64,000 nt of DNA, from NCBI RefSeq assembly GCF_000315625.1, contig NW_005434669.1, positions 1 to 64,000 on the forward strand, read 5' to 3'. The DNA comes from Guillardia theta CCMP2712. Taxonomy: Eukaryota > Protista > Cryptophyta. Below are positions 1-52,200 of the stretch, one piece after another. The notes beneath the pieces were generated by a model. It was not told the origin of the DNA. It did no database searches and worked only from the letters and a program-made list of their open reading frames with translations. How positions within the stretch are numbered: position 1 is the first letter of the stretch; each line of letters opens with the position of its first letter. Made by a program: the position numbers and the translations under genes.

Positions 1-108
1 CCCCATTCGCCCGCCTCTTCCCTCCAAGACCCTGAGCTGCGCCTGTCCTGTCCCTTCCCCCCCCAGTCGCCCACCTCTTCCCTCCATGACCCTGAGCTGC
101 GCCTGTCT
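1..108. repeat. Two imperfect ~60-bp direct repeats in the putative 3' UTR of the retroelement
   Basis: CGCCc/aCCTCTTCCCTCCAa/tGACCCTGAGCTGCGCCTGTC occurs at ~8-47 and ~68-107. Confidence 0.75.
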
Positions 109-189
109 CCTTGGTGCTAGGCTTGTTTTCCTTCCCTGCCTGTGCTCCATAGGTGGCTTGCCCATGAGCCGCGCCTGCCCCCCATCGGA

Positions 190-1843
190 CTAGGTCGACT
201 CGCTTCCCCTTCTTGCCGTCCATAGCATGTGTTGCACCACCAGCAGTTGCTTGATTGCTGCTGTCTTGATGCCTTCCCATTCCGTGTCTTCCACCCTTAG
301 CACCCTGAAATTCTCATGCCATTCCCTTTCCATGATCGATCCTTTCACTCCTGCTATGAATGTTGCTTGTTCAACTTCATGATCAGGTAGCAAAGCTGTG
401 ATTTCTGCTCGTAGGGGGGCATATTTCTCTTCCTTTTCCTGAAATTTCTTCTTCAGGCATTCCAGGCCTGTTTGTCCGACTCCGTCATATTCCGATGTCC
501 TTGCAAATTCGATGAGGACAATGCGTTTGATGCTTGCAAAGTAGCAGCAACCGTCAGGTATCCAGTGCCCTTCTCGGTGCATTGAAGTCCCCATCGCTTC
601 CATCACGATGCGTATTGGGGTGTCCCACCATGAATTGACCTGTACCCTTTGTTTCCTCCAACTCTGCTGCAGTCTTACCTTGATCTTCTTCATGACTTCA
701 TTGTGTGCTTTTTGAATCATATCTTGGAACTGCTTGCACGCTAGCTGAACATGACCCCAGGTTTCTTCTCGATCTGGACAGTGAGGACAACATGGTGAGT
801 TAGTCTTCCCCCATTGAAAGAGCTTCTTCCTCGTCGGTGCTGAGAAGGTGATCGCTTGGATAGCTGTTCGCGTAACTGACCCTTCACATTGTTTGAACCC
901 TCTCCCTAGTAAATCTCTTCCCACATGCATTTCGAGCATGAATTTCTCTGTCAAGGTGAGGTCTCCCGCTCGAATCCTTGCCACCATTGTCTGTTGTCTG
1001 ATAATGTAGTCCCATTTCTTCAAGCGATCGAATCCTGATGTAGGATTTTCTTCTCCTGCAATGATGAATTCCATTGGACTATCGTAGATTGCTTTCTCCC
1101 ATCCCGAGGCAAATGTTTGTTTTGCTTGCTTGGCCATTTCCTTTGCCTCTTGAATGTTTCTATGAGATTCTTTTGCTAGTTGGAGTCGGATCCTGATTCC
1201 CCTCCCTTCGAGTTTCCTCATGCAAGTGAGTAACCGATCATGTAGGTCCTCCAGCAGTTCGTCTTCGTATCGCATGGTATCCATTCGCAACGTATTTGTC
1301 ATAAAGCGGTGGAAACGTGTGGACTGGTACATTATTGTGACTTGATTTCCCCTTTTGATCTGTATTCCTTCCTCAAGGACATGTTGCAGAAGTAAACCGA
1401 TTGCGATTGTGTTCGCTCGGATGATGCTGCACTTCCCTTCGCTTCTTCAATCTGCTGCATAAACCATTCTCTGGATGCGTCACTCCATCCAGTCATCGCT
1501 TCTTGCAGAAACTCACGTCGTGCCTGCTGACATGTCGAGCGGATGGCTTCTGCGATAGCGTCGGGGGTGCATCCCTCCACAGCCTTGCAAGCCTGGGCTG
1601 TCCTGCTGTTCGGATAACGCTTCGCGAAGCTCTTCACCCTCTCGACGAGATCAGCTTCGAGGACAGAGGCATCCACAAGTCCGCTCTGCGTGTATTGGCA
1701 TGATCTCCGATACAGCAGGTTGCGAACATTTTCATCATACTGAAGAACCATACTTAGAAAGCTATTTGAAGTATACAAACCTCTCGCTTGCAGCTTCCTT
1801 GGCGCCCTGGCAGCTTCCCCTACACCACGCGTGCAGCCATGGT
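190..1843 (-). pseudogene. C-terminal part of a retrotransposon polyprotein (RNase H-like + zinc knuckle + PD-(D/E)xK endonuclease); frameshifted, RT domain absent
   Basis: The 380-aa ORF frame extends upstream without ATG to ~1450, where the frame changes. No RT motifs (e.g. YADD) are visible. Confidence 0.75.
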
Positions 1844-2356
1844 GCCTGAAATAACCGGCGCTGCCTGAAATAACCGGCGCTGCCTGAAATAACCGGCGCT
1901 GCCTGAAATAACCGGCGCTGCCTGAAATAACCGGCGCTGCCTGAAATAACCGGCGCTGCCTGAAATAACCGGCGCTGCCTGAAATAACCGGCGCTGCCTG
2001 AAATAACCGGCGCTGCCTGAAATAACCGGCGCTGCCTGAAATAACCGGCGCTGCCTGAAATAACCGGCGCTGCCTGAAATAACCGGCGCTGCCTGAAATA
2101 ACCGGCGCTGCCTGAAATAACCGGCGCTGCCTGAAATAACCGGCGCTGCCTGAAATAACCGGCGCTGCCTGAAATAACCGGCGCTGCCTGAAATAACCGG
2201 CGCTGCCTGAAATAACCGGCGCTGCCTGAAATAACCGGCGCTGCCTGAAATAACCGGCGCTGCCTGAAATAACCGGCGCTGCCTGAAATAACCGGCGCTG
2301 CCTGAAATAACCGGCGCTGCCTGAAATAACCGGCGCTGCCTGAAATAACCGGCGCT
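1844..2356. repeat. Perfect tandem array, 27 x 19 bp (GCCTGAAATAACCGGCGCT)
   Basis: 513 bp = 27 x 19; no variant units seen. Confidence 0.98.
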
Positions 2357-2357
2357 G

Positions 2358-2458
2358 CCTAAACCCTAAACCCTAAACCCTAAACCCTAAACCCTAAACC
2401 CTAAACCCTAAACCCTAAACCCTAAACCCTAAACCCTAAACCCTAAACCCTAAACCCT
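2358..2458. repeat. Telomeric repeat (CCCTAAA)n / (TTTAGGG)n, 13 full units plus partial units
   Basis: Perfect CCCTAAA units at 2364-2454. The C-rich strand on + is the orientation expected for a left chromosome end. Confidence 0.95.
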
Positions 2459-2562
2459 GACGGTTGGCACACAAAGGGTGCTGTATGAGGGGCAAAACAA
2501 ACTGGGGTCGAGTTCAACCCATGTGTAGCTTAGCCACCAACCCCTAGATGCCTCTCTAGCAC

Positions 2563-12266: not shown

Positions 12267-13865
12267 TCAAGCTGCATACTGCCAGATCTTGATGACCATT
12301 TGGCTCTCTTGATTGCAAACAGGGCAGCGGTTGGAGAATTGAGTACTGCACTCAAGACAGACGCATTGATGACCACATGGAATGTAAGCGTGCGATGCAA
12401 ATGAATTCATGCAAATCACACATCCATTGCTGGGATCTTCGACCGATTGGCTTGATTCGGTCTTTTCGTCGTTTTCTTGCGACTCTTGCATCTCTGCTTG
12501 ATCTTTGGTCTTGTTGGTCTGGCCGAGATTTCCCGAACCCCCGCCACTCTTGTTGTCTGTTTTCAACTCATTGGTATCTGCATTTACATTGTCCTTCCTT
12601 TTCTGGCCTTTGCCTTTCTTAACATTCTCTTTACTTTGTGCTGATCTTCCTTCGATGCTTGCAACAATCCTTTCAATTTCATCTTTCTCGAAACTGTTGA
12701 CAGAGGATGTTTGCTTTTTGCTATTTGGGTTCAGGCGGGATCTTTCTTCAGATTTTTTCCCCAATGACTTGCTTGTATTATCAAACCCGCCCCTCCCAGT
12801 TGCAGAGAATTTGTCATCAGTGACATGCAAGCTCATGATCGTAAGGAAGGATCTTGCTTGGTTCTGAACTTGCACGGAATGAGGATTCTCATCGAGGAGC
12901 CTTCTGACTATCTCAATAGCTCCGGCTGATTTCAATTTCGAAGCAAGTGATTTGGAGGCCGCAATACTGGTAATGGCGTTTAAAGCGTATTCGATCATAC
13001 CAGGTTTCTTACACTCATCCAGCAATTCAACCAAATGCTCAACGGCTCTCTTTTGACCAAACACATCTTCAAATTCGACGCTCAGTCTGCATTTATCGAT
13101 AATTTGACAAACTCCAGCTTGTATCTTCTGGCTGCTCGGGAATCTTTTCATGGCTTGAGCTATCACATCCATGTCTGCCTCCTTCACGATGGTTTCGATA
13201 AATTCACCCTGGCTGATTCTCGCCAGTAGAGTGACGATGGCTGCCTGAACCTCCTCATCGTGGCAGGTAGATTTCATGACATCCACTACCCCTCTGAGAA
13301 TACCCTTGTCAATTATGGCCTTGATCACTCCATCAACTTCAGTAATGGCTGCTACGAAATAAATGGCAAAATAAAGGAAATCAGCACACTGCCGGTGTTT
13401 CCGCATCGAGTGATTCACGATGTCAAGTATTTCAGGTCTTGCACAAGCCTTTTCTTGCCCATTTATGGCAAACTCTGTGAGAAATTCCATGCCGAGTTGC
13501 TGCAGCATTAGAATTTCTTGGTGCGACTTCATCATGATTATGAGCAGGTCAATTACTCCTGATTGAATCTGTTTGATTCTTTGAGAAGTATGCCCTGCAA
13601 GATACTTCAAGTCCCAGAGTGCGGAAAATTGTATGTGAGTGACATTAGGATAATTCTTGAGAGCAGCGATCAACATTTCGATGCCACCATGCTTCAATAC
13701 AACATGATGGACATCACGCCTTTCCCAAAGATCCGAAATGTAAACACAAGCTTTCTCTTGAACTTCCTTGTCATATGGCTTTGCTTTCATTTCCAATAGT
13801 TTCTCTTCAATCTCGCCTTCCGAATAGCATGCCTTTTTGGATTTGACCAAAAACCCTGACCGCAT
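12267..13865 (-). CDS. Armadillo-repeat protein with C-terminal RING finger (putative E3 ubiquitin ligase), intronless
   Basis: Repeated 'GGIEML..AL..YP..VQ..A' ARM-like units; C-terminal CVIC..IPCGHQCVCLEC..CPVC (C3HC4, IAP/MDM2-like). ATG at 13865. Confidence 0.85.
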   Translation of the reverse strand: MRSGFLVKSKKACYSEGEIEEKLLEMKAKPYDKEVQEKACVYISDLWERRDVHHVVLKHGGIEMLIAALKNYPNVTHIQFSALWDLKYLAGHTSQRIKQIQSGVIDLLIIMMKSHQEILMLQQLGMEFLTEFAINGQEKACARPEILDIVNHSMRKHRQCADFLYFAIYFVAAITEVDGVIKAIIDKGILRGVVDVMKSTCHDEEVQAAIVTLLARISQGEFIETIVKEADMDVIAQAMKRFPSSQKIQAGVCQIIDKCRLSVEFEDVFGQKRAVEHLVELLDECKKPGMIEYALNAITSIAASKSLASKLKSAGAIEIVRRLLDENPHSVQVQNQARSFLTIMSLHVTDDKFSATGRGGFDNTSKSLGKKSEERSRLNPNSKKQTSSVNSFEKDEIERIVASIEGRSAQSKENVKKGKGQKRKDNVNADTNELKTDNKSGGGSGNLGQTNKTKDQAEMQESQENDEKTESSQSVEDPSNGCVICMNSFASHAYIPCGHQCVCLECSTQFSNRCPVCNQESQMVIKIWQYAA

Positions 13866-13971
13866 TTTTGCCGTGCCAAGTTGAGGTCGAAGAGCAGAAG
13901 TATCTTTTTTGGGGCTGTGTGGGATCAATAAAGATGAGCTTGCGTGATCAAATAATGTGAGCTCTGATGCT

Positions 13972-14082: not shown

Positions 14083-14730
14083 TGCCCCTCCCGGGCCCTG
14101 CTTGGTTCCCGCCAAAATTTTCGAAGCTCCGAGAATCCTCGGATTTATGGCCCTTCAACTTGGCAGTGACAGGCAACCCCGGCCCCGGGCCCCGGGCCCT
14201 GAGGCGGCGCCGCCCAGTACTATGGTAGTACCACATGAAGCCCGGTGCCGCCTACCCGGCCCTAGAGTTCACGGTTACTGCCAGGCTGTATACTTGAATT
14301 GACTAGTGCGGGGACAGCAGTCGGCAGGATTAGGTTTGGTTCTCGCTGTCTTTTCTCTTGATTCTCGCCGTTTGGCCTGTGCGACAGTAGTGTCATCAGG
14401 GTCAAGCCTCCTCGCCTCTCCTGATTGTCCTCGTACTGCTTTTTGCCGGGCCGGCCCGGCCCGGCCCGTGGCTCAGGCACTGAGCCTGAGACTCGCCTTC
14501 GGCGACCTTAAGAACTCTTGCGGCCGGGCGGCCTTCGAGTCACGGCCGGGGAGTTTGACTGGCAGAAGTGTAAAGTACCCACCCCCTGCATTAAATCCAT
14601 TGTTCGTGTACCCCACCCCCTGAAAGGAGTCCGAAACAGAGACAACCCTCCAGAACAGCAGCGGCCACCCGTCCCAATGTAGACCAGAAATACATAAAAT
14701 GGACCCGAATTTACGACCCCACCCACTCCC
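14083..14730. repeat. GC/palindrome-rich intergenic island, dispersed-repeat member
   Basis: Dense CCGG/GGCC/CCCGGG. Shares CAGGGTCAAGCC..CCTCGCCTCTCCTGATwGTCCTCGTAC and CGGCCGGGCGGCC with 33410-33560. Confidence 0.6.
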
Positions 14731-14861
14731 TCAGCGTGCTCCTTTATTGCTATGGGAGCGATGATATGCACAGGTGGGACATGCGGGAAAGACGAGACGC
14801 CATGGTCCTGTAAGAAGATCAGGAAGTAAATCAACTACAAAGAGAGGTTAACCCACAAGGG

Positions 14862-17800
14862 ATGGAGTCTCAACCTCATCCTTTCACTGATGAATTCCAG
14901 GGCGACAATCGGATGTCTACAGCATTGGAAGAGCAGAAAGAGTATTTCATTCATTACGTCAGACGATTTGCCCTTCAGCCTGGTGATTTTCTAGAGCGAC
15001 AGATTCTAGAAGCATCGGCAAGATTCTCTGTCTACAATCTTTTGCGAAAAAGCCAATTTCATCATCATTGAGATCAGCCCCCCAGCTACTTTTGCTGTGG
15101 GCGACTATGATAGCTCTTAGCCCGAACCGTTTTCTCTTTGATTCAACTCTCTGGGACTCAAATTCCGTCACTCTGCATTCTCGTTTCGCCAGATTTTCAG
15201 TGCTAATGATGCGCAACGGATCAGCAGGACAAGATGTAGGCTTCGCGGGGGAGGCTGGACTTTTAATGAATGGATGCTACCTTGAGCCTGCGAGCTCTCG
15301 TCGCACGGGGGACCGAATCGTGAATGAGTATGAGCAGCCTGTTGCCTTCAACGGGTGGTTCTTGAGGAACGGATATGACTCACCAGTCACCGACATGTCT
15401 TTGGTGATTCTCGAAATATCGGAAGATGGCGAGAAGTGGAAGAATTTAGCAGTGAGCAAACCATATTGCTCTTTGATCAGAGACTCCTTGGAGTTGAATT
15501 ACGAAGGGATAGAGATGCCGACTACGCGAGGTGGCGAGGTTGTCTTTGATTTTACATCATCATGGTGTATGACACCAACCATCTTGGTTTCTGTTGCGCG
15601 GCTGATTGAAGTGTTTTCTCTAATGCTGGGCTTCCTTTTTGTATGGCATGGCAGTGATGATTTAATGCTGGTGAGTGTGATGCGTGTTTGACGCTGACTT
15701 CTGACAGCAACTGCGATTCTCAGATTTTGTGCACTGGATTCACCATTGCATCCCTGTTGTTGATCGGATCGGCCATCCTCTTTCGAATCGGCGGCGAGTG
15801 CTATGGCGTGCCCTTGACAGAAGGCTTGACGGTTCGATTTCAATTTTTCTGTCGAATTCAATGACCTGCGTTGCAGACCCTCCTTCTTTTCCCGACTCCA
15901 CTGATTTTTTCAGATATTTTTGGTTTTGAGTTTGGACTTATCTGGGCAGCGGTTAACCTGATCGACAAAGTGTCGAACGGCAATTCTCAGATTCTTTCTG
16001 AATGTTTTGTCGCTGCCGTGATGATCTCGGTGATTATGACCCAAATCTACGTTTCGCGAAAAGCTCGTTTCGACGTGAGACAGGATGAGCAACAGTTTGA
16101 TAAAGCATGGGACAGAATTTCGCGTAATGAACATGCTCATATATACTTGCAGAGCATTCAAAAAACCTTGTTGACAGTGCAACGAGAGTCCTATGAAATC
16201 TCACAGCGATTTCAAGCTGCAATGCAAAGTATAACTTCTACAAAACAGATTGATCTCGGAAAAGGGGCAGTCGTTGTCGAGCGAAATTCGCCAGCTTCGC
16301 TCAAGATGAAGAACAAACTGTTTCGTTCTACCTTCATCGACAGAGCCAAAGCTGAATATCAGGCATATTGCATCTCGAATTTGGATCAGCTCTACGCGCA
16401 AGCCATTCTTGTCTATCCCCTCTTCCTCCGCAAGGTGCAGCACATTGCTCACATCGCCGGCGGCTACTTTGCTGGGCGAGGAGAGGATGGAGCTGCCTCG
16501 TACATCTCATGGCGAGAGGCGGCAGGGAAGCCGGAGGAGGAGGCGAAGATCAAGTGGGCAGGGCTGAAGGGGTCGACAAGGGCGGTGGAGAAGATCGTGA
16601 GGTCGTACGGCGGGGACGTGAGCAAGCTGGTGGATGTGGTACGCGAGGCGATCGTGTTCGACAGCCTGCAGGACCTCAGCGTGGCAGTGCAGGCGATCAC
16701 GAGGGACAGCGAGATCCGGGTGATGCGCATCAAGAACCGCTTCGACGAGGCGTACGACGCGAGGGGGTCGGCGGGGTATCGGGACGTGGCGATCAATCTG
16801 TGCGTGGTAGGGGAGGAGAGCGGGAGGGTGGGGGTGTCGCGCCATGTCTGCGAGCTTCAATGCAAGTTGAGAGAGTTATCCATCATCGAAAGTTCTGATC
16901 AGCATTCACGATACTTGCACTATAAGAGTTGTTATTGTGACTTTCTTCGATCTCTCACTGCTGCGTTTCAGAGAAAGGTTGACATGTTTTTGAAGTCTAA
17001 GAAGCCGATTCGCGTCAAGGATATTGCTATTTCAACGCGACGAGTGTCTGATTATGCTTCAGACTTAGCAGATAAAGCACAAAATTCTTTCGACGACTTT
17101 ATCAAGTCATGCGATGGCTTCTCACGGCTCTTTCAGTTTTCGATGCTAAAGATTTCTTTGCCATGTAATATTCTTGATCGGGCTCTTGAGAACGGCTCGA
17201 ACGGTTTTCGCAATGCAAGCTGGACCAGCGTTTTGTTTTCTGCAACACCTGTAAGGGCTCTGCTATGGAAGTTTCAAACAATTTTCTTGTTTTCTCTCAT
17301 CGTATTTGGGCTCCTCGGTCTCTTTGTTCTGCACCGCCATGACAACGAGAGCATGAATCTTTTCTCAGCTCGAGCGGTCCTCTTCAGAACTGTAAAGACT
17401 CGCAATGGGACTGATGCAGCTTTGCTCACTAAGCCCTCGGTCTCTGACCTTGTTCTGTACAGATCTGGCTGTCGTGTCAACCAAACTTCAACCAAACTTT
17501 GGCTTAATGGAGCTGACGCTGTTTTGTATTCGAAAGAAGTGCTGGGGTTCAATGCCGTTCGCTTCAGGAATAATGAAGAGCAGGGCACCGAATGGGCTGA
17601 CGCGGTAATTTTTCAAATATACCGCATGGAGGAGGATTTCGATCCCAGGCAGCCATCAGTAGCCAAGAAGGATTGGACGTTGATTGCCACATCTTCGAGC
17701 CAGTTTCTCCATCTTCAGTGCGGAGAGGATGCTGTGAAGGGATCGAAAAACTTTTTGACGAGCCTTCAACGAGGATCGTTTTCCGAAGTCGATCTCCGAG

Positions 17801-19050
17801 CGACTTGGAACTTTAACTTGTTACAATATGGTTGTTACATCCCCATGATATTCGCGTTTCTTATCACAGCTCTTTCACGAATTTGCAATTTGATACGACT
17901 TTCTCAAGCTTTCTTTTGTTGTTCCATTGCGGGTCCTGGCGTTTCTGTTCTCGTGGTTATGCTGGGTCAGTGGGTGGAAGGAAGAGATTTGTTTTATGCG
18001 AATTTCGACACAATCATTCAGGGAATCTTGTGGATCATGCTGGGTTGTCTTGCTTGGTTCAGGCAAAAATGGTTCCTCTCATTCATCCCGGTCTTGTGGG
18101 GTACAGTCTTTGCGCTGTCAGGAGTCCACTCTGTTGTGATATGCGGACGACTGTCGTTTTACCTTCAACCAGACCCCTTCGCCTTCTTGTGCATCTACGC
18201 CTTGATCACACTCGCCAGATACGTGAGCAAATTCATTTCATTCAAGAAGATTGAAAAAGACCTCAAGGCATACGAAACAGAATGGAAATCTATAGTACAG
18301 ACTGATATCTCCGATCAACAAGAAATGCTGAAACGTGTGCAAGAGAATGTTAGAGAAACGATCGTTCGCCAACTTTTCGATGAAATTCACCAGACTGAAA
18401 GCGACCAGAACTTCGTTTCATCCAACCCACAAGTAAGCTTGACAATTCTGCCAACTCCGAACATCCAGCCAAGCCCAGTGAAATCCCTGGATCAGCTCTA
18501 CGCGCAAGCCATTCTTGTCTATCCCCTCTTCCTCCGCAAGGTGCAGCACATTGCTCACATCGCCGGCGGCTACTTTGCTGGGCGAGGAGAGGATGGAGCT
18601 GCCTCGTACATCTCATGGCGAGAGGCGGCAGGGAAGCCGGAGGAGGAGGCGAAGATCAAGTGGGCAGGGCTGAAGGGGTCGACAAGGGCGGTGGAGAAGA
18701 TCGTGAGGTCGTACGGCGGGGACGTGAGCAAGCTGGTGGATGTGGTACGCGAGGCGATCGTGTTCGACAGCCTGCAGGACCTCAGCGTGGCAGTGCAGGC
18801 GATCACGAGGGACAGCGAGATCCGGGTGATGCGCATCAAGAACCGCTTCGACGAGGCGTACGACGCGAGGGGGTCGGCTGGGTATCGGGACGTGGCGATC
18901 AATCTGTGCGTGGTAGGGGAGGAGAGCGGGAGGGTGGGGGTGTCGCGCCATGTCTGCGAGCTGCAGCTTGTCTTGCGCTCTTTCATGAAACTACGAAATG
19001 CGTCAGGGCACAAACGATATGTGAGCTTTCGTGACCTGCGAGGAGAATAG
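14862..19050 (+). CDS. Multi-pass membrane protein with two tandem [ectodomain - TM bundle - RelA/SpoT-like nucleotidyltransferase (SYNTH)] modules
   Basis: ORFs 15068-15691 and 15871-19050 are joined by short introns. Both modules carry LKG..RAVEKIVRSY, LVDVVR..IVFD, RIKNRF, GYRDV.IN, HVCELQ and H.RY motifs, plus several hydrophobic helices. Confidence 0.8.
16382..16856 (+). repeat. Internal duplication copy 1 (475 bp), encoding the SYNTH-like domain
   Basis: Identical to 18488-18962 except G16773/T18879 (synonymous Ala). Confidence 0.95.
18488..18962 (+). repeat. Internal duplication copy 2 (475 bp), encoding the SYNTH-like domain
   Basis: Offset 2106 bp (702 codons) from copy 1. Confidence 0.95.
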
Positions 19051-19261
19051 AAGAGAAATAGACCTTGACTGATAGGGGAGATACCCAACAGCTCTTACTG
19101 TGTAGTAGAAGTAAACTCTCTACACTTTCATGCAGGTCTCGAGTCGATCAAACTCTTCACATCTCATCAGTTATAATTCTCATTGTCTTGGCAGCGTGGT
19201 CGCGTCCGCCTCGTTACAGATGGAAACCGTAACAGCCGTTTTTAATGCCTGGGGCTCCGAG

Positions 19262-19415
19262 GCAGGGACGGCAGCGACGAGGAGAATGACAGGGGGAGGG
19301 CAGCGACGAGGAGAGGGAGAGAGGGAGGGAGGGAGAGGGAGGGCAGCGACGAGGAGAATGACGGGGGGAGGGCAGCGACGAGGAGAGAGAGAGAGAGGAA
19401 GGGCAGCGACGTGGA
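19262..19415. repeat. Purine-rich repeat (GGCAGCGACGAGGAGA units)
   Basis: About five GGCAGCGACG units separated by GA-rich spacers. Confidence 0.7.
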
Positions 19416-19708
19416 GATGCTGTAGGATTGATAGCATGCTGGGTGAGAGAAGAAGACAACAGGGGAGGGTGATGCAGGAGTACAGCACCTAGGCTCAACA
19501 CGAGAGGTATCTGCTCAGTTTCACCGCTTTACACAGCTTTGTAATGATGATTGAGGAGATGGGTTTCGTTTTCATTCGAGAGCTTGTGAAGAAAGAGAAT
19601 AGCAGGACCATTCTTGTGACTCTGAATCTCACTTCAACAATTGGCTCTGATCGAAACCTGCATAGGTTTACTCACTCATCTAAAGCTTCGAGTGGAAGAT
19701 TACTGGTA

Positions 19709-20531: not shown

Positions 20532-22518
20532 TTACAGAGCCCTCTCTGCACAGCTGCTGGGGATGACGCATACGTGCTGCCCAACCACCAACGGTTGTAA
20601 GGGTGTAATGTCCTGGTTCATGTCCAGGATGAGCCGCATGGTCGTACCAAATTTCGCCGCGAGCTTCTCCAGAGTATCACCCGGATTGATGAGCACGAGC
20701 TGACCGACGTTGATTAGCTGCCCGGCAGTGATCCCCCCCTCAAGTCCATAGCCTTCTGGCTTCGAGATACCCTTGTTCAGCGCCCACAGTTGCAGCCAAC
20801 TCGTGCTGAAGTTTGCTGCAATCGATTTAAGAGTATCCCCAGTCCTCACCATGTAAAGACACTTTGGTATCCTCAGTTCAAAGCAAACCTGTGAGGAACC
20901 TCCTCCGTTCTTGCCGTTGAGGTAATCAGATGCCTGGAAGCAGAAGTCGCGTACTTCCCCGCCTGACTTTGGAGGAGGCACCCAAGTCACATTCATCGAA
21001 ACAATATTAGATTGTGAGTTTGAATCCCGATACACAGGCGTTACAGCAGCTCCCGACCTGCAATGAATCAAAGAGAAATCGTTCAGTATGACACTAATTG
21101 TAGAAACATCAAATCAACTCACGGCAAACCAATCGGCGTGATGGTGATGTTGTCAGCTAGATTCATATCCTTTGCAACCAGTTCATACGTCCATGTTTGA
21201 CCCATGAAGATGTACTCTTCAACTCTGCTCTGCTTTGGGTTCTCCCACACAGGTCCGTGATCTTGTCTCATGTAGAAGTCAATACACGATTGTGCCGATC
21301 CGATGGGATTAGTACTATTCACGAAGACTTGAAGACATATTACAGTCCAACTATCCATGATGGCAGGAACGGTCCAAACGACCGAAGCTTCATACCCTGT
21401 ATAGCCTCCCCGCACGTTCGAGAGCATGGGATTGACGTCACTCACAACAAACCCATCAGGCACACTGCTGGTTAACAATCTCAACGACACTGGATCGGCA
21501 CCAGGCATCATGAACCGAAGCACGTACTGATAAGTGTACATCTTGTACGCTTCGTTCACTGCAGGATAAGCATCTATTCCTTGACTGAAGTTGCTGTCAT
21601 ATACTGGAATCGAAGTCTGCACACCAAATATTTGAAGTTCGAAGTCCGCTACTGCCTTCGTGTTATGCTCGGCATCAGTGACTTCGACTTGCATCCAATA
21701 CAGATTTTCTGCTGCAGCAGTAGATTTGGCAAGATCAGTCATGTTGACCCACATTGCTCCCGTCGTTTGGTTAATGTAAAGTCCATTCGCGTTCCAGAAG
21801 GTCTCATTCCTTAAAAACCACACGAAGCGGGATGCATTTTGTGATTGCAGCGGGTGTGGACCAGAATCATAAGCAGTGAGATAGAAAGGGGTCAACGCAT
21901 CTGTCTGCAAGATAACTCTTGGCAAGATGGCAAAGTGCGGTGTAAAAAGAATGGCATCTGACATCAGAACCTCACTTGAAACGTTGAAGTAGCCATCATT
22001 CCTGTTTAGCACAGACTGTGATCGACAACAGCCTGAGAAATATGCCACGTAATTCTGAGAAACATCTGCATATTCGTGTTCAATTACGGCTTCACCTCTC
22101 CACATTTTCAGTTCATTGTCCACAAGCAAAACTTTTGTTAACACGATGCTGGACTGTCCATCTCCAAAATTTAGAACGGGATTGCCAAGCCCTTGGATTC
22201 GAATTGTGTCCCCCACAGCGATCTGTTGATTCTGCGTTTGGTACTTGAAAGGTAAGAACTCTGTGCTCCAGGCACTCACCTAAATTAAAGTCACAAGCCG
22301 AAACAACATCGAGAAAAAACAAGTGCAGTCACCAAGGTAAAGCGAACGTAGCTTGAAGGGAGGTCAGCTGGTTTACTCCAACTCAAGGAAGCATATTTGA
22401 AATGACCTCCTAGATTGCATCGATATCAGATCATTCCAATACTCTGATGCAAAGAGGACACACCTTCAGCTGGGTGTTGAACCAACATCACAAGTAGAAT
22501 CCACAAAAGCTGTTTCAT
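20532..22518 (-). CDS. Secreted protein with beta-sandwich/cadherin-like region and two C-terminal LysM domains
   Basis: Signal MKQLLWILLVMLVQHPAE at 22518. LysM1 YMVRTGDTLKSIAANFSTSWLQLWALN; LysM2 INPGDTLEKLAAKFGTTMRLILDMN. Confidence 0.8.
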
Positions 22519-36993: not shown

Positions 36994-39900
36994 TCACTTG
37001 GTGTGGAAAACCTGTGGAGTATCAGGAGCTTCGATAAATCAGCAAGCTCTTTGCACCATTGAGTCGACGAGGATAGTAGCGATGTGGAACGCGAGGTCTT
37101 CCTCGAGCTTGGTGAACTCCTTTGATGAGGACGTCTCAAGGTTTCTGCGCATCTCGACGACTCCAATAGGTCGCTGCGAGTCGAATGTGAGATGGAGTGT
37201 AGTGAAGAAGAGCTGGAGGGGGAGGAAGACGAAGGCGAGGAGGAGGATGAGGAGGAAGAGGTGGTGGTGGTGGAGGGAGACATGGAGGTGCTGGTGGTAA
37301 TTCTAAAGGAGCAAGGTGGGAGAACTACCAAGAGAGAGTTGTCCATAAGAGGATGGCACATGTAGACACAGGCGGGCCCGACATCCCGAACAATGCTCGA
37401 CTCGCTTCCAAGCGCATTTTGATCGCCCTGACATTGGTCTCTGCGATGACAAGTCAGACGTGAAATCACCTCGCCGACTCACTGCAAGCCCGAGTCTTGA
37501 ACGATGACTGGAGACACCTTGCGGAAACATGAGCCTGCGATGCCTGCGATGGGCACGATGGTGGAAGTCCTGCCGAGAATGTGAGGAAGAAGAGGAAGAG
37601 GAAGAGGAAGAGGAAGAGGAAGTGAATGAGAAAGATGAAATGCAAGGTGACTAGTTACCCTCCATGCTCGAAGCATCTCCAGGAGTCAGTGACCAGGTTG
37701 TTCTCATCAAAGATGGCTATGTACATCCTAATTTTCGCTGACATCACCGAGGAAATCTGAGAGATGGCGCTAGACAGCAAGACTTCAATGCTGCCACTGC
37801 TGGAGTAGAGAAAGCGCGACGACATGAGCATGGAGAGAGTCTGGGAACATGAGTGAGGCCAGCGAGGAGGAGCTTTCGATTCACCTGCCGCCTTGCATCG
37901 TTGAGCTGTTTTTGATGATTGAGATATGCCAAAGACTCTGAGATCTTCTTTCCTATCATCTTTGAAACAATCTCATCCGTGCCATCAAATGCTCCTGACA
38001 TGTCACTTGATCAGATTCAAGCATATCATTCAGCAAGACTGAACCAGATTGCTTGTTCAAGATCTCTATGATCAATGATGCTTGCTGTTTGCTTTTGAAG
38101 AAAGTGAGCTGGCTAAGAACAGAGGGATGGAGTGGTACTTGTTCATGACAGGAACATAGATGGCGTTTGAGAGCTTCAGACCTTCGCGTTGGTCGAAGGA
38201 GGGCTGAAAGCGAGGGTCCTGCAGGGCAGTCAGTCACTGCGACTTCATTGACGTCCGCATGCCTGTAAGAGGTTGTTCACGATCAACGTTTGCGACGTCA
38301 TGCAGCACAGGCCGACGAACCCTTGGTCTGACCTCAACAAGATTCTTCTTCCTGTGAACTCATCGATCGCTGTCGCCATGCCGCCTTCCCGCACAAACAC
38401 GTTGGCACGTTCGGCTTTGACGATGTCGCGAACGATCGTCCCGTACTTGACAAGCTGCTGGTCCAGGTCGGACTCGAAGTTGACCGGGTCTGTCAAGTTC
38501 ACCGACGCGTAAACTTTCGAGAGCAAGACGTTGTTGAGGATGGCACACGCGATGTGCTTGCCCAGCTGCAGCAGGAGCTGCGCGTCCTGCAAGAAGATCC
38601 GTCTCTCTCCGTCCGCGCTCCTGCTGATCACTTGGATGCAGCCAATCTGTCGCTGCCCATGCACGAGGGGCGCGCACAGGATGGCGCTGGCTGACCTGAC
38701 GCTTCGCTGATCCACCGCGGGGTCAAAGTGCTCGCTGCTGTGATCGAGGGTGTGAAAGACAAGGCTTCCTGTCTTGATGACATGGCCCGCGATGCCCGAG
38801 GCTGCCTCAGAGTAGGAGAGAGCAGCGACGTCGTCCTTGAGCTCGTACATGGCGCTTCCTCCATGTCCTGCCATGAACAGCACACACTCCACGGGACCGA
38901 AGGTAGACCGGATCATCGCCTTGATCTCGTTGACAAGATTCAGCGAGTCAAACTGCGACAGATCATGGACCTTTGACGCCTGCTCGACAATAAAGTTCTG
39001 CTTGTCCACTTGGTAGTCGAGTCGATTCCTCACAGCTTTCAACTCACTCCTAGTCATGGCGTTCTGCACCAGCGTTGCCGCAAGGGTCGAGAACTGCTCA
39101 ACTTTTGTCACGTCAGATTGATTGATCTTAGAGCCTATTCCTCGCTTGTTCATGAGCTGTAAGATGCCGATCATGGAGGATTCAGATTCAACTGAAAAGA
39201 CAGGAACACAGATGAGGTTATTGACTTCAAACTTGGTCAGGATACTCAGGTAGTAACTATGCCTGCTGTCCTGATGCACATTGAGACTCATCTGGTATGT
39301 CTTACTCTCAAATGCTCGCCCAGCAATTCCTGCCTCCGAAAGCTCAACACTCTTTGGTTCTTCGTCCGGGTGCAGCTTGACGGACAGTGTGCCATTCCCT
39401 TGGATCCTGAAGAACCAACATCTTTCAAATGCAAACAGCTTTTCCGCAAGCTTTCCGATTTCAAAGTAGCAATTCAATACATGATCCATGTGATACAAAT
39501 CGCCAATTGCTGAAATGGCAGCTGAAAAGTGATCGTAAGTTGTGGAAGCCCTTTCCTTTTCCAAAATGTGTTGAAGTTTCAGGCCCCAAGAGTTTGACAT
39601 GATCTTAACAGTTTCGAGGACCCAAGGATCAAACCTCGAGTGCTTTTCTTCGCACTTGATGGCCAAGACAACCCCAACGGTCTTACCGTAGGCCTGCAGT
39701 GCTATCGTCATGAGTGCTTCCATTGTTTCGTTCGGACACAAAAGTTTAGAGATCGTTTTGAGCTTCAACACTTGTTTCTCCGAAAGTCTGTCCTTTGTTT
39801 CAGATGGAAAGTTGAGAGAGCCTTGGTTTTGAAGAGTGTGTGAAAACGGAAAGCTATCGGCTTCAAAATAGATGTAGTTTCCGTTGCTGTCTAGTCGTTT

Positions 39901-41250
39901 CGTCCAAAGGAGCGATGACTCCGAATCTAGAATGAGCAAGAAGCAGTGGCGGCACTGTGCAACTGCAGTAACAAAGGAGTTGATGCTTCGCTCTGCTGCA
40001 TCGACATCCTCCCACGCTGATTGAAGCTCTTGGCTTGCAGCTGGATTCATCTTCATCAAGTTGTAGTGCAGGGCACCCGCCATGTTGCCGACGAGCTCCA
40101 GATTGTTTCGATCGTTGTCGGTGAATTTTACGTGTTTGCAGTTTCTCACTTGCAAGAAGCCCACAGCTCTAGAGTGGTGGGAGACAGGGCAGTATAAAGA
40201 TCCAAGATGCTGTCTCGCACTTACCGACGCGTTCTCGATTCTAAGGGAAGAATTGAAATTGGTCGATGAAGACAGAACTTGCTCAAAGATTCCTTTAAGA
40301 GGAATTCTGCTCTCCTTAAACGTTTCTGTCTTGGATTCTGTAGATTTTGACCATGTGCACAGGTCCATGTTCTCGTTATCTATGATGAAGCAATTGGCTT
40401 TCTCAGCATCACAGACTTCTTTGCAGACAACGCCGGTGGCGTGGACTAGTTCGACAAGATCTGAGCATTTGGCAAGCTCAATGAATCTGTTAATGATGGT
40501 TGTCAGCTTTCGGTTTTGAGAATCGATTCGTTCAAACTTGTTGCACAACTCTAAGGTGACAGTGGCCTGTCTCCCCAGCAGATCCAAACAGGTCATATCC
40601 ATGCTCGTGAATCCTCCGACAACTTTGTTGGCAACCTGAAGCACGCCCACAAGCTTTCCTAAGATTGTGTACACAGGAACGCAGGCAATCGTCTTCACTC
40701 CTGGAGATGGTGCCCAATCAACAAGCGCATCAAACCTTGAGTCATGGTGCGGGCGATTGCTGATGATGGCTCGCTTCTCGTTGATACATGCGCCAGCCAA
40801 GCCTTGGCATGGAAACAAGCCGTTGTCGCCTCTTCTCCCTTTGACCCGTAGCATTGCGTTGTTCTTTTCATCCTTCTCAATCAGAAAGAGCGTCGCACTC
40901 TTGCATGAAGCTATTTGTTTTGCGGCCGACAGAACTCTTTCTATGGCAGAACATGTTTCCGTATCAACTGCTGATTGCAATATGATCGGGTAAATGTCAT
41001 GAATCGTCGCCATGTCGCTCGAACCCTCAAGCTCAGCGGCTTCATTGGGTGCTACTCTTGCAGTCTGCGGCTGCGGCAGCAAAGAACCAGTCGCCTGCAA
41101 TCTTGGGTGGAGGTGGAGGCGCAGAGATGAAGGAAGTGACTTGGCGCTGCTATCCGACGCCTGCAGGGCGGGATCGCGAGCTCCTTTTAGAGGGTCCAGC
41201 AGACGCAGGCGACGGGAGAGAGGGTTTCTAGCAACGAGAGGCTCGGGCAT
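36994..41250 (-). CDS. Multi-GAF-domain protein (about 6-7 GAF repeats)
   Basis: 1002-aa ORF with repeated GIAG/GLAG..FD..VD..ILCxP..IG.LQ..NK..F..D GAF motifs. Further GAF-like exons extend to ~37.0 kb. Confidence 0.85.
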
Positions 41251-41379
41251 CACCTCAACACAAACCTCGCTCTGAAGCTTCCGGAGCTCAACGCGCCCCT
41301 CTTAGGGCCTCAGTTGCTGACTGTGAGCATGTGGGATGCTCCTCTTCCCCTAAGGAGGTCGCATCCTATGATGCGCGTG

Positions 41380-49209: not shown

Positions 49210-52200
49210 CTACATGTCTTCGAGCCTTAATCGAGGGACGATGTTCATGCTTTGAAGCTCGTGGAAGACAAGCTTGCAGGCGTATGGCTAAGAACAAAAG
49301 TCACAAACCAAGAAAAAATATAAGCAGAGAAAAAAATATGGTTTTGCAACGACGAGAAAGGAAACGAAGCAGCAGCACACGTGAAGGAGTAGCAGGCAGC
49401 CATCTTACCATCTGGATCATGGACATGTGAAGATTTGTCTTGCAGTTTTGACACCATCCGGGGTATCCGATCAGCCCGCACTTCTTGCATACGTGGCACT
49501 GGAACTCGTCCGAAGAGATCATCAACCTCTCCAGCAGCAGCGCCGAGCTCCCGTAGCTCACCAAGCAGTCTCGCTCCATCTCTCCCAGGCGCAGCCCTCC
49601 ATCCTTGCTCCTCCCCTCTGTCGGCTGCCTTGTCAGCACAGTCCTAGGGCCCTTGTGTCGGGCGTGCATCTTGTCCTGCACCATGTGTTTGAGCTTCTGG
49701 TAGTAGATAGGCCCGAAGAAGATGTAGGCTGGAACAGGCTCCCCCGTGATCCCTGACGTCAACAGCTCCTTCCCCCCGAAGTGATAGCCATGCAGCACCA
49801 GCGTGTCCGAGATCGCCTGCACTGAGCTCGCCGTCGAGGCGAAGGCCGTCGCGTCAGCGAACTTCCCGTTCATGAGGGCAGCCTTGCCCCCGAGCATCTC
49901 CAGCAGCTTGCCGACTGTCATGCGCGAGGGGAAGCCGTGAGGGTTCATGATGAGGTCTGGACACAGGCCTTCCTCAGTGAAGGGCATGTCTTCCTGGGGG
50001 ATGATGATGCCTGTCACTCCCTTCTGCCCGTGCCTGGAGGAGAACTTGTCGCCGAGTTCAGGGCGGCGAGTTGTCCTCATGAGAACTTTCACCAGGAAGT
50101 GCTCGTCGTGGTTGGAAGTCAGGAGCACCTGGTCGACGTAGCCGTCTGCCTTGTCCTTGTACACGAGAGGAGCGCTCTTGAACGCGTCCTCTCGCAGCTC
50201 GTCGGGGTTGTTGATAACGGTGCTGATGTCCTTGGGCACCATCTTGTTGACAAGGATCTGACCCTGCGACACCTTGCTGCCCACCCCCACGATCCCGTCC
50301 CTGTCTAAGTTTGCCGTCCTCAACGCCAGTCGCTCGTTTCCTCCTGACTGCGGGTAGGTGATGCGATCCTCGGCCGCATTGGAATAGCGCTTGAGGGAGG
50401 TTGTTGACTTCTTGAGCACGATCGTCCGGCCGAACCCTCGATCAACGGCAGAGCGGTTGAGCACAACAGCGTCCTCGATATCGTAGCCTGTGTAGCTCAT
50501 GACCGCCACTGTGGCGTTCTGACCTGCGGGGATGCGATGGAAGTTGATGAACTCGATGGTCTTTGTCTGAGCTAGGGGCCTCTGGGGGTAGACAAGGAGG
50601 TAGAGGAGCGTGTCTATCCTCTGAAGCTGGTTGTATGCGATGGCTCCGATTGCCTGCTTGCCCATGGCGCACTGGTAGGTGTTGCGAGGCGACTGGTTGT
50701 GGTGGGGGTTCGGGATGAGACCTGCGCAGGCTCCCATGACGGTCAAGGGGTCGATCTCGAGATGAGTGGTCTTGGGGCCGATGCCATGCTCGTAGAGGGC
50801 GATGAGCGAGTCGTTCTCCTCGTTCACATCGAGGTACTCAATCAGCCCTTCCTTGAGGAAGTCGGAGAACGTCCGGCAGTTGCTGAGAACCTCCTTGATG
50901 TGCTGGTCAGTGACGAACGACCTGCCGTTCTTGACGATGATCAGAGGACGGCAGACGCGCCCCCCATCGCACGAGATGTGCACAGTGCGCTGCCGGGCGT
51001 TGGAGTAGATGGACACAAACTCCCCCAGGCGACCTCTCCTCCTCATCGCTCGCAGGAGCTGCACGAAGTTCTTGGGCGCGCGGTGGAGGCCGAGAAGAAG
51101 ACCGTTGAGGAACACCAGGTACACGTTCCCCAGCGTCGCCTCCTCCCCCGAGAGGATTCCGAGGTCCTCAACACCGAGATCATAGCAGAGAAGCTCGATA
51201 GGAAGCTCGTCGTCATCAGTCGTGACGTGCGTCATGAGCGACAAGTTCTTGACAAGGCCGCAAGATTCTCCCTCGGGCGTGTCAGCCGGGCACAACATCC
51301 CCCACTGAGAGGGCTGCAGGGCGCGGGGCCCGCTGACCTTTCTCGTCTTCTCGAACTGACTCTGCACGCGGGTGATCATTCCGAGCGCCGCGATGTAGGA
51401 GAGGCGCGAGAGAACTTGCGTTACTCCCTGGCGCTCCATCCCGAACCTCCGGAGGTTCCAGTTGCCCGTGCTAATAGCATTGACGAGGGCCGAAGTGATC
51501 TTGGTGGGAGGAAGGTACTTGAGGACGTCGAAAGTGGTGGTCCGAGAAGGTTTTTCCAGCTGCTTCTGCGCGATTTTCTGCACGTCGCTGTTGAAGCTGC
51601 AACGAGTCAAAAGTGAGATGAAAAGGCGAAAGATGGAAGCCAAGCTTTAGAAGATGGGGTTCAATGGAACAGAGTAGAAGCATGAAGCTAAGGAGGGGAG
51701 CAAGGCAACAGAAGATCACCTCTTGAACACATCTTCGAAGAGAAGGGACATGGTCTGACCAGCAAGCTCCAACCTCTTGTTGCCGTAGTAATCCTTGTCG
51801 TCCATCACAGTCTCGTCGTGCATTGCTTGGATGATGCGGCGAAGCATCAAACAGATGTAGATCGCCTTTGCTCGGAAATCGTACTTCACCACTGGCACGT
51901 GCGAAACCACAACTGTCGCTAGCTGCAAGAGAGAGTCAGAAGAGCAACAAGAAAACTGGAGTAGATTCACAGAACGTTAACAAAGAACAGAACACCAACC
52001 AATTACAGTTGTCATCAGAACTTCAGTGAAGAATACAGCAAGATAAATGAGTACTCCATGCATGCAGGAATACGAAATCGTGAAACGGAACCGAGTGCAC
52101 AAACAATGATCCTTATCCGCAAAGAGGCGACAGAAAGCACCTTCTCTCGAGCCTCTTCCGCTTTCGTGGACTGCTGCCGTCTAGCAAACTTGGTTGGCTT

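What the first reader, a model, noticed from the sequence alone, without database searches (positions are those of the whole stretch)
16382..18962. Catalytic cassette homogenised (474/475 bp identical) between otherwise highly diverged modules
Seen: 16382-16856 and 18488-18962 differ by one synonymous base, while the ectodomain and TM parts of the two modules share only scattered residues. The cassette is also visibly richer in G/C-ending codons than the rest of the ORF, and its edges match domain edges (LDQLY...VCEL). Inference: recent gene conversion or a swappable domain cassette shared across a receptor family, giving variable sensors and a constant enzyme, as in immune-receptor diversification.
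Basis: partly seen in the sequence, partly recalled or inferred. Interest (0 to 1): 0.8.

Follow-up and report, generated by a model that had tools for sequence, protein, structure and literature searches.

The report
Gene-conversion island in two-module algal receptor
Two old, very diverged halves of one subtelomeric membrane-protein gene of a cryptophyte alga carry an almost letter-identical 475-base stretch for their enzyme domain, because one copy has recently overwritten the other (gene conversion), which is a known process and not a new domain-swapping system.

Summary
Window 16382-16856 and 18488-18962 differ at one synonymous base. The edges are sharp, and GC3 is 0.83 in the block against 0.45-0.49 in the rest of the reading frame.

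Both copies lie in one expressed three-exon gene (14862-19050, 1363 codons), about 12 kb from a telomere-type repeat. The protein is built twice over: membrane helix, beta-sandwich outer domain, further helices, then a divergent RelA/SpoT-like synthetase-fold domain.

Outside the block the two halves share about 22% of residues. Each half has its own orthologue in Hanusia phi, so the duplication is far older than that species split. Contigs from three separate studies break at the block edges. In the DNA run the block has 2.0 times the depth of its flanks.

This means the repeat is real, has exactly two copies, and is not shared across a receptor family. Intragenic gene conversion explains it best, probably recurrent and GC-favouring.

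The 3' edge lies 27 codons inside the domain, not at its end.

Earlier notes of this scan report the same kind of island in other genes of this genome (Guillardia theta by those notes), and the same protein family on other DNA. It is a clean example of a known process.

The parts
14862..19050 (+). Whole gene: three exons, 1363 codons, two-module membrane protein
   Evidence: A spliced RNA contig gives both introns. With one unknown base after 15039 the frame is open from the ATG at 14862 to the stop at 19048-19050.
14862..15669 (+). Exon 1. The window lacks one base after 15039 relative to short-read contigs.
   Evidence: Contigs of X2 and X3 carry an extra T behind 15039. Reading an N there joins ORFs 14862-15071 and 15068-15691. 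Hanusia P0044 is collinear across this point.
15670..15722 (+). Intron 1 (53 nt, GT..AG)
   Evidence: Joint in RNA contig of X3
15723..15830 (+). Exon 2
   Evidence: RNA contig of X3
15831..15875 (+). Intron 2 (45 nt, GT..AG)
   Evidence: Joint in RNA contig of X3
15876..19050 (+). Exon 3. It holds the end of module 1, all of module 2 and both cassettes, with no intron.
   Evidence: Open frame. RNA contigs are collinear with the DNA.
15068..15667 (+). Module 1: membrane helix, outer beta-sandwich domain, next helix
   Evidence: Aligns with the same part of module 2 and of family members. hhalign probability 97.7%, E 1.4e-12.
16382..16856 (+). Cassette copy 1: most of RelA/SpoT-like domain 1 (gene residues 475-634)
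16773..16773 (+). The only differing base (G here, T at 18879), synonymous
   Evidence: The G form appears in contigs of X1 and X3, the T form in X2.
16857..16940 (+). Diverged last helix of domain 1, outside the converted tract, running on into the linker to module 2
   Evidence: 5/27 identical to the tail of domain 2. The corresponding tail is conserved in the family.
17236..17883 (+). Module 2: membrane helix, outer beta-sandwich domain, next helix
   Evidence: AlphaFold model mc413561d9934: pLDDT 71 overall, core blocks 84-93. Best fold match is a beta-sandwich of galactanase BT0290 at Z 6.8, which is below the level that means kinship.
18488..18962 (+). Cassette copy 2: most of RelA/SpoT-like domain 2 (gene residues 1177-1336)
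   Evidence: An X2 contig of exactly these 475 nt has 2.0 times the flank depth.
18963..19047 (+). Conserved C-terminal helix of domain 2, outside the converted tract
   Evidence: Family alignment A2. Model m3c892d02d9eb has helices at 173-195.
2357..2454 (-). Context: telomere-type (TTTAGGG)n tract, about 12.4 kb from the gene start
   Evidence: 12 overlapping matches, none expected by chance

Best explanation
The 475-bp identity is a tract of non-allelic, intragenic gene conversion between the two segments that encode the RelA/SpoT-like domains of one two-module membrane-protein gene.

The gene arose by an ancient internal duplication of a unit made of membrane helix, beta-sandwich outer domain, further helices and enzyme domain. 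The sensor and membrane parts have since drifted to about 22% identity. The enzyme-coding parts stayed similar enough under purifying selection to pair during recombinational repair, so one copy is used as template for the other.

The tract probably ends where the flanks are too diverged for a heteroduplex to extend. On the 5' side that is the start of the conserved domain. On the 3' side it is 27 codons before the domain's end, where the last helix of domain 1 has diverged into the inter-module linker.

The high GC3 of the tract in an otherwise AT3-rich subtelomeric gene fits GC-biased repair over repeated conversion events.

Shown here: the identity, its reality in the DNA, two copies only, the great age of the duplication, transcription and splicing, and the fold of the domain. 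Inferred: the conversion mechanism itself, its recurrence, the GC bias as the cause of the GC3 island, and the reason for the tract edges.
For: 1. 474/475 identity with sharp edges.
2. Flanks share 22% of residues and BLASTP is not significant, yet they are homologous by profile comparison: 97.7% probability, E 1.4e-12.
3. Module 1 pairs with Hanusia phi P0044 and module 2 with P0004, each at 100/99 support. Path length between the two modules is 3.79, against 0.68 and 0.44 between orthologues. P0004 starts in the tail after domain 1, so the two-module gene predates the species split.
4. At the one informative site, both copies in the window have Ile where both Hanusia fragments have Val.
5. 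Both Hanusia transcript fragments end inside the cassette. A Hanusia paralogue, P0001, has a 50-residue block identical between its two domains, which are otherwise 29% identical.
6. Contigs of three studies break at the cassette edges. Depth in the DNA run is 119.6 against 63.7 and 58.1, which equals two copies.
7. GC3 is 0.83 against 0.45-0.51 (p 1e-16), rising to 0.93 in the 3' half.
8. No Rfam family lies in the stretch.
Against: No conversion event was observed directly.

Only 18 and 57 residues of the Hanusia cassettes are available, and no Hanusia nucleotide data, so the within-species versus between-species test rests on one site plus assembly break points.

High GC3 is the norm for single-module paralogues elsewhere in the genome (0.72-0.88). 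The island could therefore partly be retained or imported composition rather than the result of GC-biased conversion.

No long read spanning both copies was examined.

In the RNA run the cassette contig has depth 79, not the roughly 120 expected for two copies. I cannot explain this.
Confidence: 0.85

Rival explanations
1. Assembly or polishing artefact: two really different domain-coding segments were made identical by repeat collapse or consensus polishing.
For: The window does carry at least one small assembly error nearby, a missing base after 15039. No long read was inspected.
Against: Runs from three separate studies (X1 2011, X3 2014 RNA, X2 2021) give contigs that stop exactly at the cassette edges with 30-nt overlaps. 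They give a single cassette contig with 0 differences from the window. In the DNA run that contig has 2.0 times the flank depth. Two different segments would instead give two contigs at single depth that run through.
Confidence: 0.03
2. A swappable or mobile coding cassette shared by many receptor genes (constant enzyme, variable sensors), moved by a dedicated diversification system as in antigenic variation or immune-receptor assembly.
For: The gene is subtelomeric. The family has varied outer parts, according to earlier scan notes. A 337-nt contig of higher depth shares 23 nt and 18 nt with the cassette, so diverged paralogues exist.
Against: Cassette depth equals two copies, not many. Paralogues from Guillardia theta and Hanusia phi are only 41-47% identical in this domain. 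The homogenised part is the constant one. No repeats or recombination signals flank the block.
Confidence: 0.03
3. One single recent replacement event, in which one domain segment was copied over the other once, with no ongoing concerted evolution. The GC3 island would then be inherited from a GC3-rich ancestral or paralogous sequence.
For: One difference in 475 nt needs only one recent event. Paralogues elsewhere have GC3 of 0.72-0.88 throughout.
Against: The Hanusia orthologue fragments also break inside the cassette, and P0001 shows an identical block. This suggests independent homogenisation in another lineage. The cassette is 86-94% identical to the Hanusia orthologue's, so it is resident in this gene and not freshly imported. 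A resident sequence in an AT3-rich gene needs some force to keep GC3 at 0.83.
Confidence: 0.12
4. Identity kept by selection on the nucleotide sequence itself, for example an embedded RNA element or an antisense gene, without conversion.
For: Antisense ORFs of 110-117 codons lie in the cassette. The cassette is G-rich, with one G4-like motif.
Against: No Rfam match. Long antisense ORFs are expected in GC-rich coding DNA. Selection cannot make two segments that have been separate for so long identical at 158 of 159 third positions.
Confidence: 0.01

Closest known systems
Concerted evolution of paralogous segments by non-allelic gene conversion with GC enrichment (examples recalled from memory, not checked here: mammalian histone and Hsp70 paralogues, Galtier 2003, Kudla 2004)
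   Same: A sharp-edged block of near identity in old duplicates. Paralogues within a species are more alike than orthologues. GC3 is raised in the converted part only.
   Different: Here the partners are two domains inside one reading frame, 2.1 kb apart, in a subtelomeric gene of a cryptophyte. The tract covers most but not all of a domain.
Small alarmone synthetases and other single-domain RelA/SpoT homologues (RelP/RelQ, Tas1, CapRel)
   Same: The same fold: Foldseek probability 1.00 and TM 0.5-0.58 to RelP, RelQ, CapRel and Tas1. A profile of the family hits Tas1 at 4.7e-8 and YwaC at 2.5e-4. The motif positions K..S/T..R/K, D..R, GYR and E.Q are conserved.
   Different: The protein is eukaryotic, membrane-anchored and carries the domain twice. 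The window's own domain gets no Pfam hit. The G in D-x-x-G-x-R, the His after GY and the Arg of E-x-Q-x-R-T are replaced. The product is unknown.
Class III adenylyl cyclases of animals (6TM-C1-6TM-C2)
   Same: The layout is a membrane block plus catalytic domain, twice in one chain, arisen by internal duplication.
   Different: The catalytic fold is unrelated. Here an outer beta-sandwich domain sits in each module. In cyclases C1 and C2 have diverged into non-equivalent halves, while here the two domains are kept identical over 160 residues.
Other GC-rich conversion islands noted by this scan in the same genome (PA14, SPRY and RWP-RK cassettes; notes s1-432751, s1-437061, s1-434715)
   Same: The same pattern of domain cores near-identical at DNA level inside diverged coding sequence, read as gene conversion.
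   Different: A different gene family. I did not re-test those notes.

Membership tests
Non-allelic gene conversion tract / concerted evolution | Block of near identity with sharp edges inside otherwise diverged homologous sequences | tested here: met
   474/475 nt identical against 22% residue identity in the flanks. The flanks are homologous by hhalign, E 1.4e-12.
Non-allelic gene conversion tract / concerted evolution | The duplication is older than a speciation, yet the copies within the species are more alike than orthologues | tested here: met
   Each module groups with its own Hanusia orthologue at 100/99. The cassette is 86-94% identical to the Hanusia fragments but 100% identical between modules at protein level. 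Only partial Hanusia cassettes were available.
Non-allelic gene conversion tract / concerted evolution | The repeat exists in the DNA and is not an assembly product | tested here: met
   Three studies give contigs that break at the edges, and DNA depth is 2.0 times the flanks. Long reads were not examined.
Non-allelic gene conversion tract / concerted evolution | GC enrichment of the converted tract (GC-biased conversion) | tested here: inconclusive
   GC3 is 0.83 against 0.45-0.51. Paralogues elsewhere have GC3 of 0.72-0.88 throughout, so the direction of change is not shown.
RelA/SpoT homologue (RSH) synthetase-fold domain | Fold of the synthetase domain | tested here: met
   Model pLDDT 92.8. 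The 32 matches at E up to 0.001 are all SAS, Rel, SpoT, CapRel or Tas1 chains.
RelA/SpoT homologue (RSH) synthetase-fold domain | Sequence match to the family model (Pfam PF04607) above its threshold | tested here: not met
   The window's protein gets no Pfam hit. Only 4 of 27 relatives hit PF04607, best E 3.4e-6. The link is by profile against solved structures: Tas1 4.7e-8, YwaC 2.5e-4.
RelA/SpoT homologue (RSH) synthetase-fold domain | Catalytic motif residues kept | tested here: inconclusive
   K80, D94, R97, K127 and G141-Y142-R143 are invariant, and E167 is nearly invariant, across 27 relatives. They align with the motifs of YwaC and Tas1. Several other canonical residues are replaced.
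RelA/SpoT homologue (RSH) synthetase-fold domain | Pyrophosphate transfer from ATP to a nucleotide or RNA acceptor | not testable with these tools
   Needs an enzyme assay.
Programmed cassette-exchange or diversification systems (antigenic variation, immune-receptor assembly) | A pool of donor cassettes | tested here: not met
   Depth equals two copies. No other copy in the window.
Programmed cassette-exchange or diversification systems (antigenic variation, immune-receptor assembly) | The exchanged part is the variable, ligand-facing part | tested here: not met
   The homogenised part is the conserved enzyme domain. The outer parts are the diverged ones.

The most novel reading that the evidence does not exclude
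The identity is not just a by-product of repair but is used. One possibility is that the two catalytic domains must stay identical to form a symmetric pair in one chain, so converted alleles are favoured. Another is that the 475-bp direct repeats act as a recombination switch that deletes or restores module 2, giving one-module and two-module receptor forms from a subtelomeric locus.
Probability: 0.06. Interest if true: 0.65.

Novelty: new member of a known kind. Interest (0 to 1): 0.35.

Why it matters
The case is clean and well bounded. It shows that gene conversion can keep one domain of an internally duplicated gene identical while the rest diverges almost beyond recognition. For genome annotators, such blocks are real and are not collapse artefacts. 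It also shows that GC3 islands inside genes of this alga can mark conversion tracts.

The gene itself belongs to a family of membrane proteins with divergent alarmone-synthetase-like domains. I found no paper on this family, and its chemistry deserves a test. That family had already been noted by this scan on other DNA, and its existence does not depend on this finding.

Tried and rejected
Searches that gave nothing useful:
- Pfam on the whole reading frame and on the cassette found nothing usable. Two first attempts failed on a frame error, as did.
- Single-sequence search of solved structures gave only a marginal Tas1 hit, E 0.029. The profile was needed.
- Rfam found no family in 14700-19300.
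- Foldseek with the outer-domain model found no match at E up to 0.001. The wide VIA-align search gave at best Z 6.8 to a galactanase beta-sandwich, which is too weak to name a fold family.
- Papers: none on RelA/SpoT plus Guillardia, nothing relevant on membrane alarmone synthetases in algae. The one paper joining Guillardia with GC-biased conversion treats the three-chromosome nucleomorph, not the nucleus.
- The raw RNA run X22 gave only 4 reads, so it said nothing about strand or transcript ends.

Steps not taken:
- I did not run the large representative-protein search. The word searches and profiles had settled the family, and no claim here rests on an absence of relatives.
- I could not BLAST the cassette against the whole genome and used k-mer depth instead.

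Readings rejected: assembly artefact, shared family cassette, and selection on an embedded RNA (see rival explanations).
Full report
**1. The observation**

Aligning 16300-16950 with 18406-19056 shows a block of 475 nt, 16382-16856 against 18488-18962, with one mismatch and essentially random flanks.
- The mismatch is 16773 G against 18879 T, at the third position of an Ala codon. Neither edge can be extended by even one base.
- A repeat scan of the whole 64-kb window finds just these two copies (family D6).
- GC3 is 0.83 in each copy. It is 0.45 upstream, 0.49 between the copies and 0.51 in exons 1-2 (Fisher p 1e-16). Inside the block it climbs from about 0.65 to 0.93 towards the 3' half.
- The block is also G-rich on the coding strand, with GC skew +0.27 against -0.01 in the flanks.

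**2. The gene**

Both copies lie in one open frame, 15871-19050. Laying public runs on 14700-19300 gave the following.
- A spliced contig from X3 covers 14873-15669, 15723-15830 and 15876-16411. This defines two GT..AG introns of 53 and 45 nt and shows that X3 holds RNA of this gene.
- A further X3 contig runs without a break from 16827 to 18517, from the end of copy 1 to the start of copy 2. Its depth (58.9) matches that of the first exons (63.7). Together with the unbroken frame, this makes a single mRNA likely.
- Contigs of X2 and X3 carry one extra T behind 15039. With an unknown base there, the frame runs from the ATG at 14862 to the stop at 19048-19050, giving 1363 codons. Hanusia phi protein P0044 is collinear across this point, so the window has a one-base assembly error or polymorphism there.
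- A telomere-type (TTTAGGG)n tract lies at 2357-2454, so the gene is subtelomeric.
- Neighbouring genes have GC3 of 0.41-0.50. Genes deeper in the window have 0.6-0.78.

**3. The protein**

Each module consists of a short N-terminal part, a membrane helix, an outer domain of about 160 residues, further hydrophobic helices, a linker and the enzyme-like domain.
- The outer domain of module 2 folds as a beta-sandwich: pLDDT 71 overall, core blocks 84-93. It has no convincing structural relative.
- The repeated domain has no Pfam hit of its own.
- A 27-sequence alignment of its relatives hits Tas1 (6ox6) at 4.7e-8 and YwaC/RelP (6fgk) at 2.5e-4. Four of the relatives hit PF04607.
- The AlphaFold model has pLDDT 92.8. 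Its 32 matches at E up to 0.001 are all small alarmone synthetases, CapRel, Tas1 or Rel/SpoT enzymes, with TM 0.5-0.58 for the best ones.
- K80, D94, R97, K127 and G141-Y142-R143 are invariant, and E167 nearly so. These sit at the motif positions of the synthetase fold in the printed alignments.

The domain is therefore a divergent RelA/SpoT-homologue synthetase-fold domain, probably a nucleotide pyrophosphokinase. Its activity and product are untested.

Relatives come from cryptophytes and from unnamed marine eukaryote transcripts. None is more than 54% identical in the domain, apart from the Hanusia orthologue fragments.

**4. Age of the duplication against age of the block**

- Outside the block the modules share 93 of 421 aligned residues (22%), and BLASTP is not significant. 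Small profiles still align them over 194 columns at 97.7% probability, E 1.4e-12. They are old duplicates, not unrelated sequences.
- Hanusia phi has a fragment orthologous to module 1: P0044, 46% over 453 residues, ending 18 residues into the cassette.
- It also has one orthologous to module 2: P0004, 59% over 538 residues. It begins in the diverged tail that follows domain 1 and ends 57 residues into cassette 2.
- In a tree of the helix-sandwich-helix part, each module pairs with its Hanusia orthologue at 100/99 support. The path between the two modules is 3.79 changes per site, against 0.44 and 0.68 between orthologues.

The two-module gene therefore existed long before the two species split, yet the cassettes in this genome differ by one base. 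Both window copies have Ile where both Hanusia fragments have Val (AQAI against AQAV). This is a small but correctly directed sign of species-wise homogenisation.

Both Hanusia fragments stop inside the cassette, as transcript assemblies do at repeats. A two-module Hanusia paralogue, P0001, has 50 identical residues in the 3' half of its two domains, which are otherwise 29% identical. Because that contig ends exactly at the block, a misassembly cannot be excluded there.

**5. Is it real, and how many copies?**

- In X2 (DNA, possibly the source sample) the flanks have depths of 63.7 and 58.1. A contig of exactly 18488-18962 has 119.6, a ratio of 1.96.
- In X1 (2011, another study) one contig runs from 15079 to 16856 and another from 16827 to 18489.
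- In X3 (2014, RNA) contigs likewise break at the block edges, with 30-nt overlaps.
- All show 0 differences from the window in the cassette. The G form of the variable base appears in X1 and X3, the T form in X2.

This rules out a polishing artefact and shows two copies, not a family-wide cassette.

A 337-nt contig of higher depth shares only 23 nt and 18 nt with the cassette. It is presumably a diverged paralogue.

**6. Mechanism**

Intragenic gene conversion explains all of the above. A block of 475 nt is an ordinary tract length (established knowledge). Two points are inferred, not shown:
- The tract is confined to the part of the two modules that purifying selection kept similar enough to pair.
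- The 3' edge falls where the last helix of domain 1 has diverged (5/27 identical), presumably because in module 1 it continues into the linker.

The GC3 island fits GC-biased conversion over repeated events. The gradient towards the 3' half matches the position of the identical block in P0001.

There is a caveat. Two single-module paralogues from the 2012 Guillardia theta assembly have GC3 of 0.72-0.88 along their whole length. High GC3 is therefore the family norm away from this chromosome end, and the direction of change in the cassette is not shown. That the cassette is 86-94% identical to the Hanusia orthologue's argues that it is resident in this gene and not freshly imported.

**7. Comparison, novelty and open points**

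The process is the well-known concerted evolution of paralogous segments.

Earlier notes of this scan name the genome Guillardia theta. They report about fifty genes with such domains, including other two-module ones, and several other GC-rich conversion islands (PA14, SPRY, RWP-RK). I used these as leads only. My own data agree on a cryptophyte close to Hanusia and Guillardia, and on the pattern, but I did not re-test those loci.

I found no paper on this protein family.

The finding is thus a real, tidy new example of a known process in an unusual gene. It is not a new diversification system.

Unexplained points:
- The cassette contig in the RNA run has depth 79, not about 120.
- The last 157 nt of the transcript have depth 5.9. 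This is probably an end effect, with the transcript ending near 19089.

Noticed in passing
window 15039-15040: Short-read contigs of two runs (X2 DNA, X3 RNA) carry one extra T here. Without it the gene's first exon is split into two frames, so the window has a one-base assembly error or polymorphism. X1 also shows a one-base gap at 15247 at low depth.
   Followed up: partly
window 15876-16040 compared with Hanusia P0044: The Hanusia module 1 orthologue (an isoform labelled .11) lacks about 55 residues that hold two hydrophobic helices at the start of exon 3. This may be alternative splicing or a lineage-specific deletion.
   Followed up: no
window 19130-19500: A purine-rich imperfect repeat lies just downstream of the gene, with 29- and 43-nt spacings of a GGCAGCGACGAGGAG-type unit (family D7). 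Read depth falls there in all runs.
   Followed up: no
window 12270-13928 (-): The neighbouring gene encodes an armadillo-repeat protein with a C-terminal RING finger. Its GC3 is 0.46, like the other genes near this chromosome end.
   Followed up: partly
window 21122-22279 (-), 38248-41301 (-), 49304-51646 (-): Other genes in the window are an integrin-beta-like (SIBA N-terminal) protein, a multi-GAF-domain protein, and the second-largest subunit of an RNA polymerase (Rpb2 domains 3-7). GC3 rises with distance from the telomere-type tract.
   Followed up: partly
window 1-2460: The (CCCTAAA)n tract at 2357-2454 is not at the very end of the window. A perfect 19-nt array (1843-2363) and further sequence lie beyond it, as earlier notes on this window also say.
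   Followed up: no
L001 2501-3465 (-): In the 2012 Guillardia theta assembly the single-module paralogue P0003 lies next to a gene with a bacteriorhodopsin-type Pfam domain.
   Followed up: no
runs X15, X19, X20: Freshwater and lake metagenome runs hold 8-33% of the sampled words of this stretch. That is odd for a marine alga. It may reflect a relative, or carry-over between samples.
   Followed up: no
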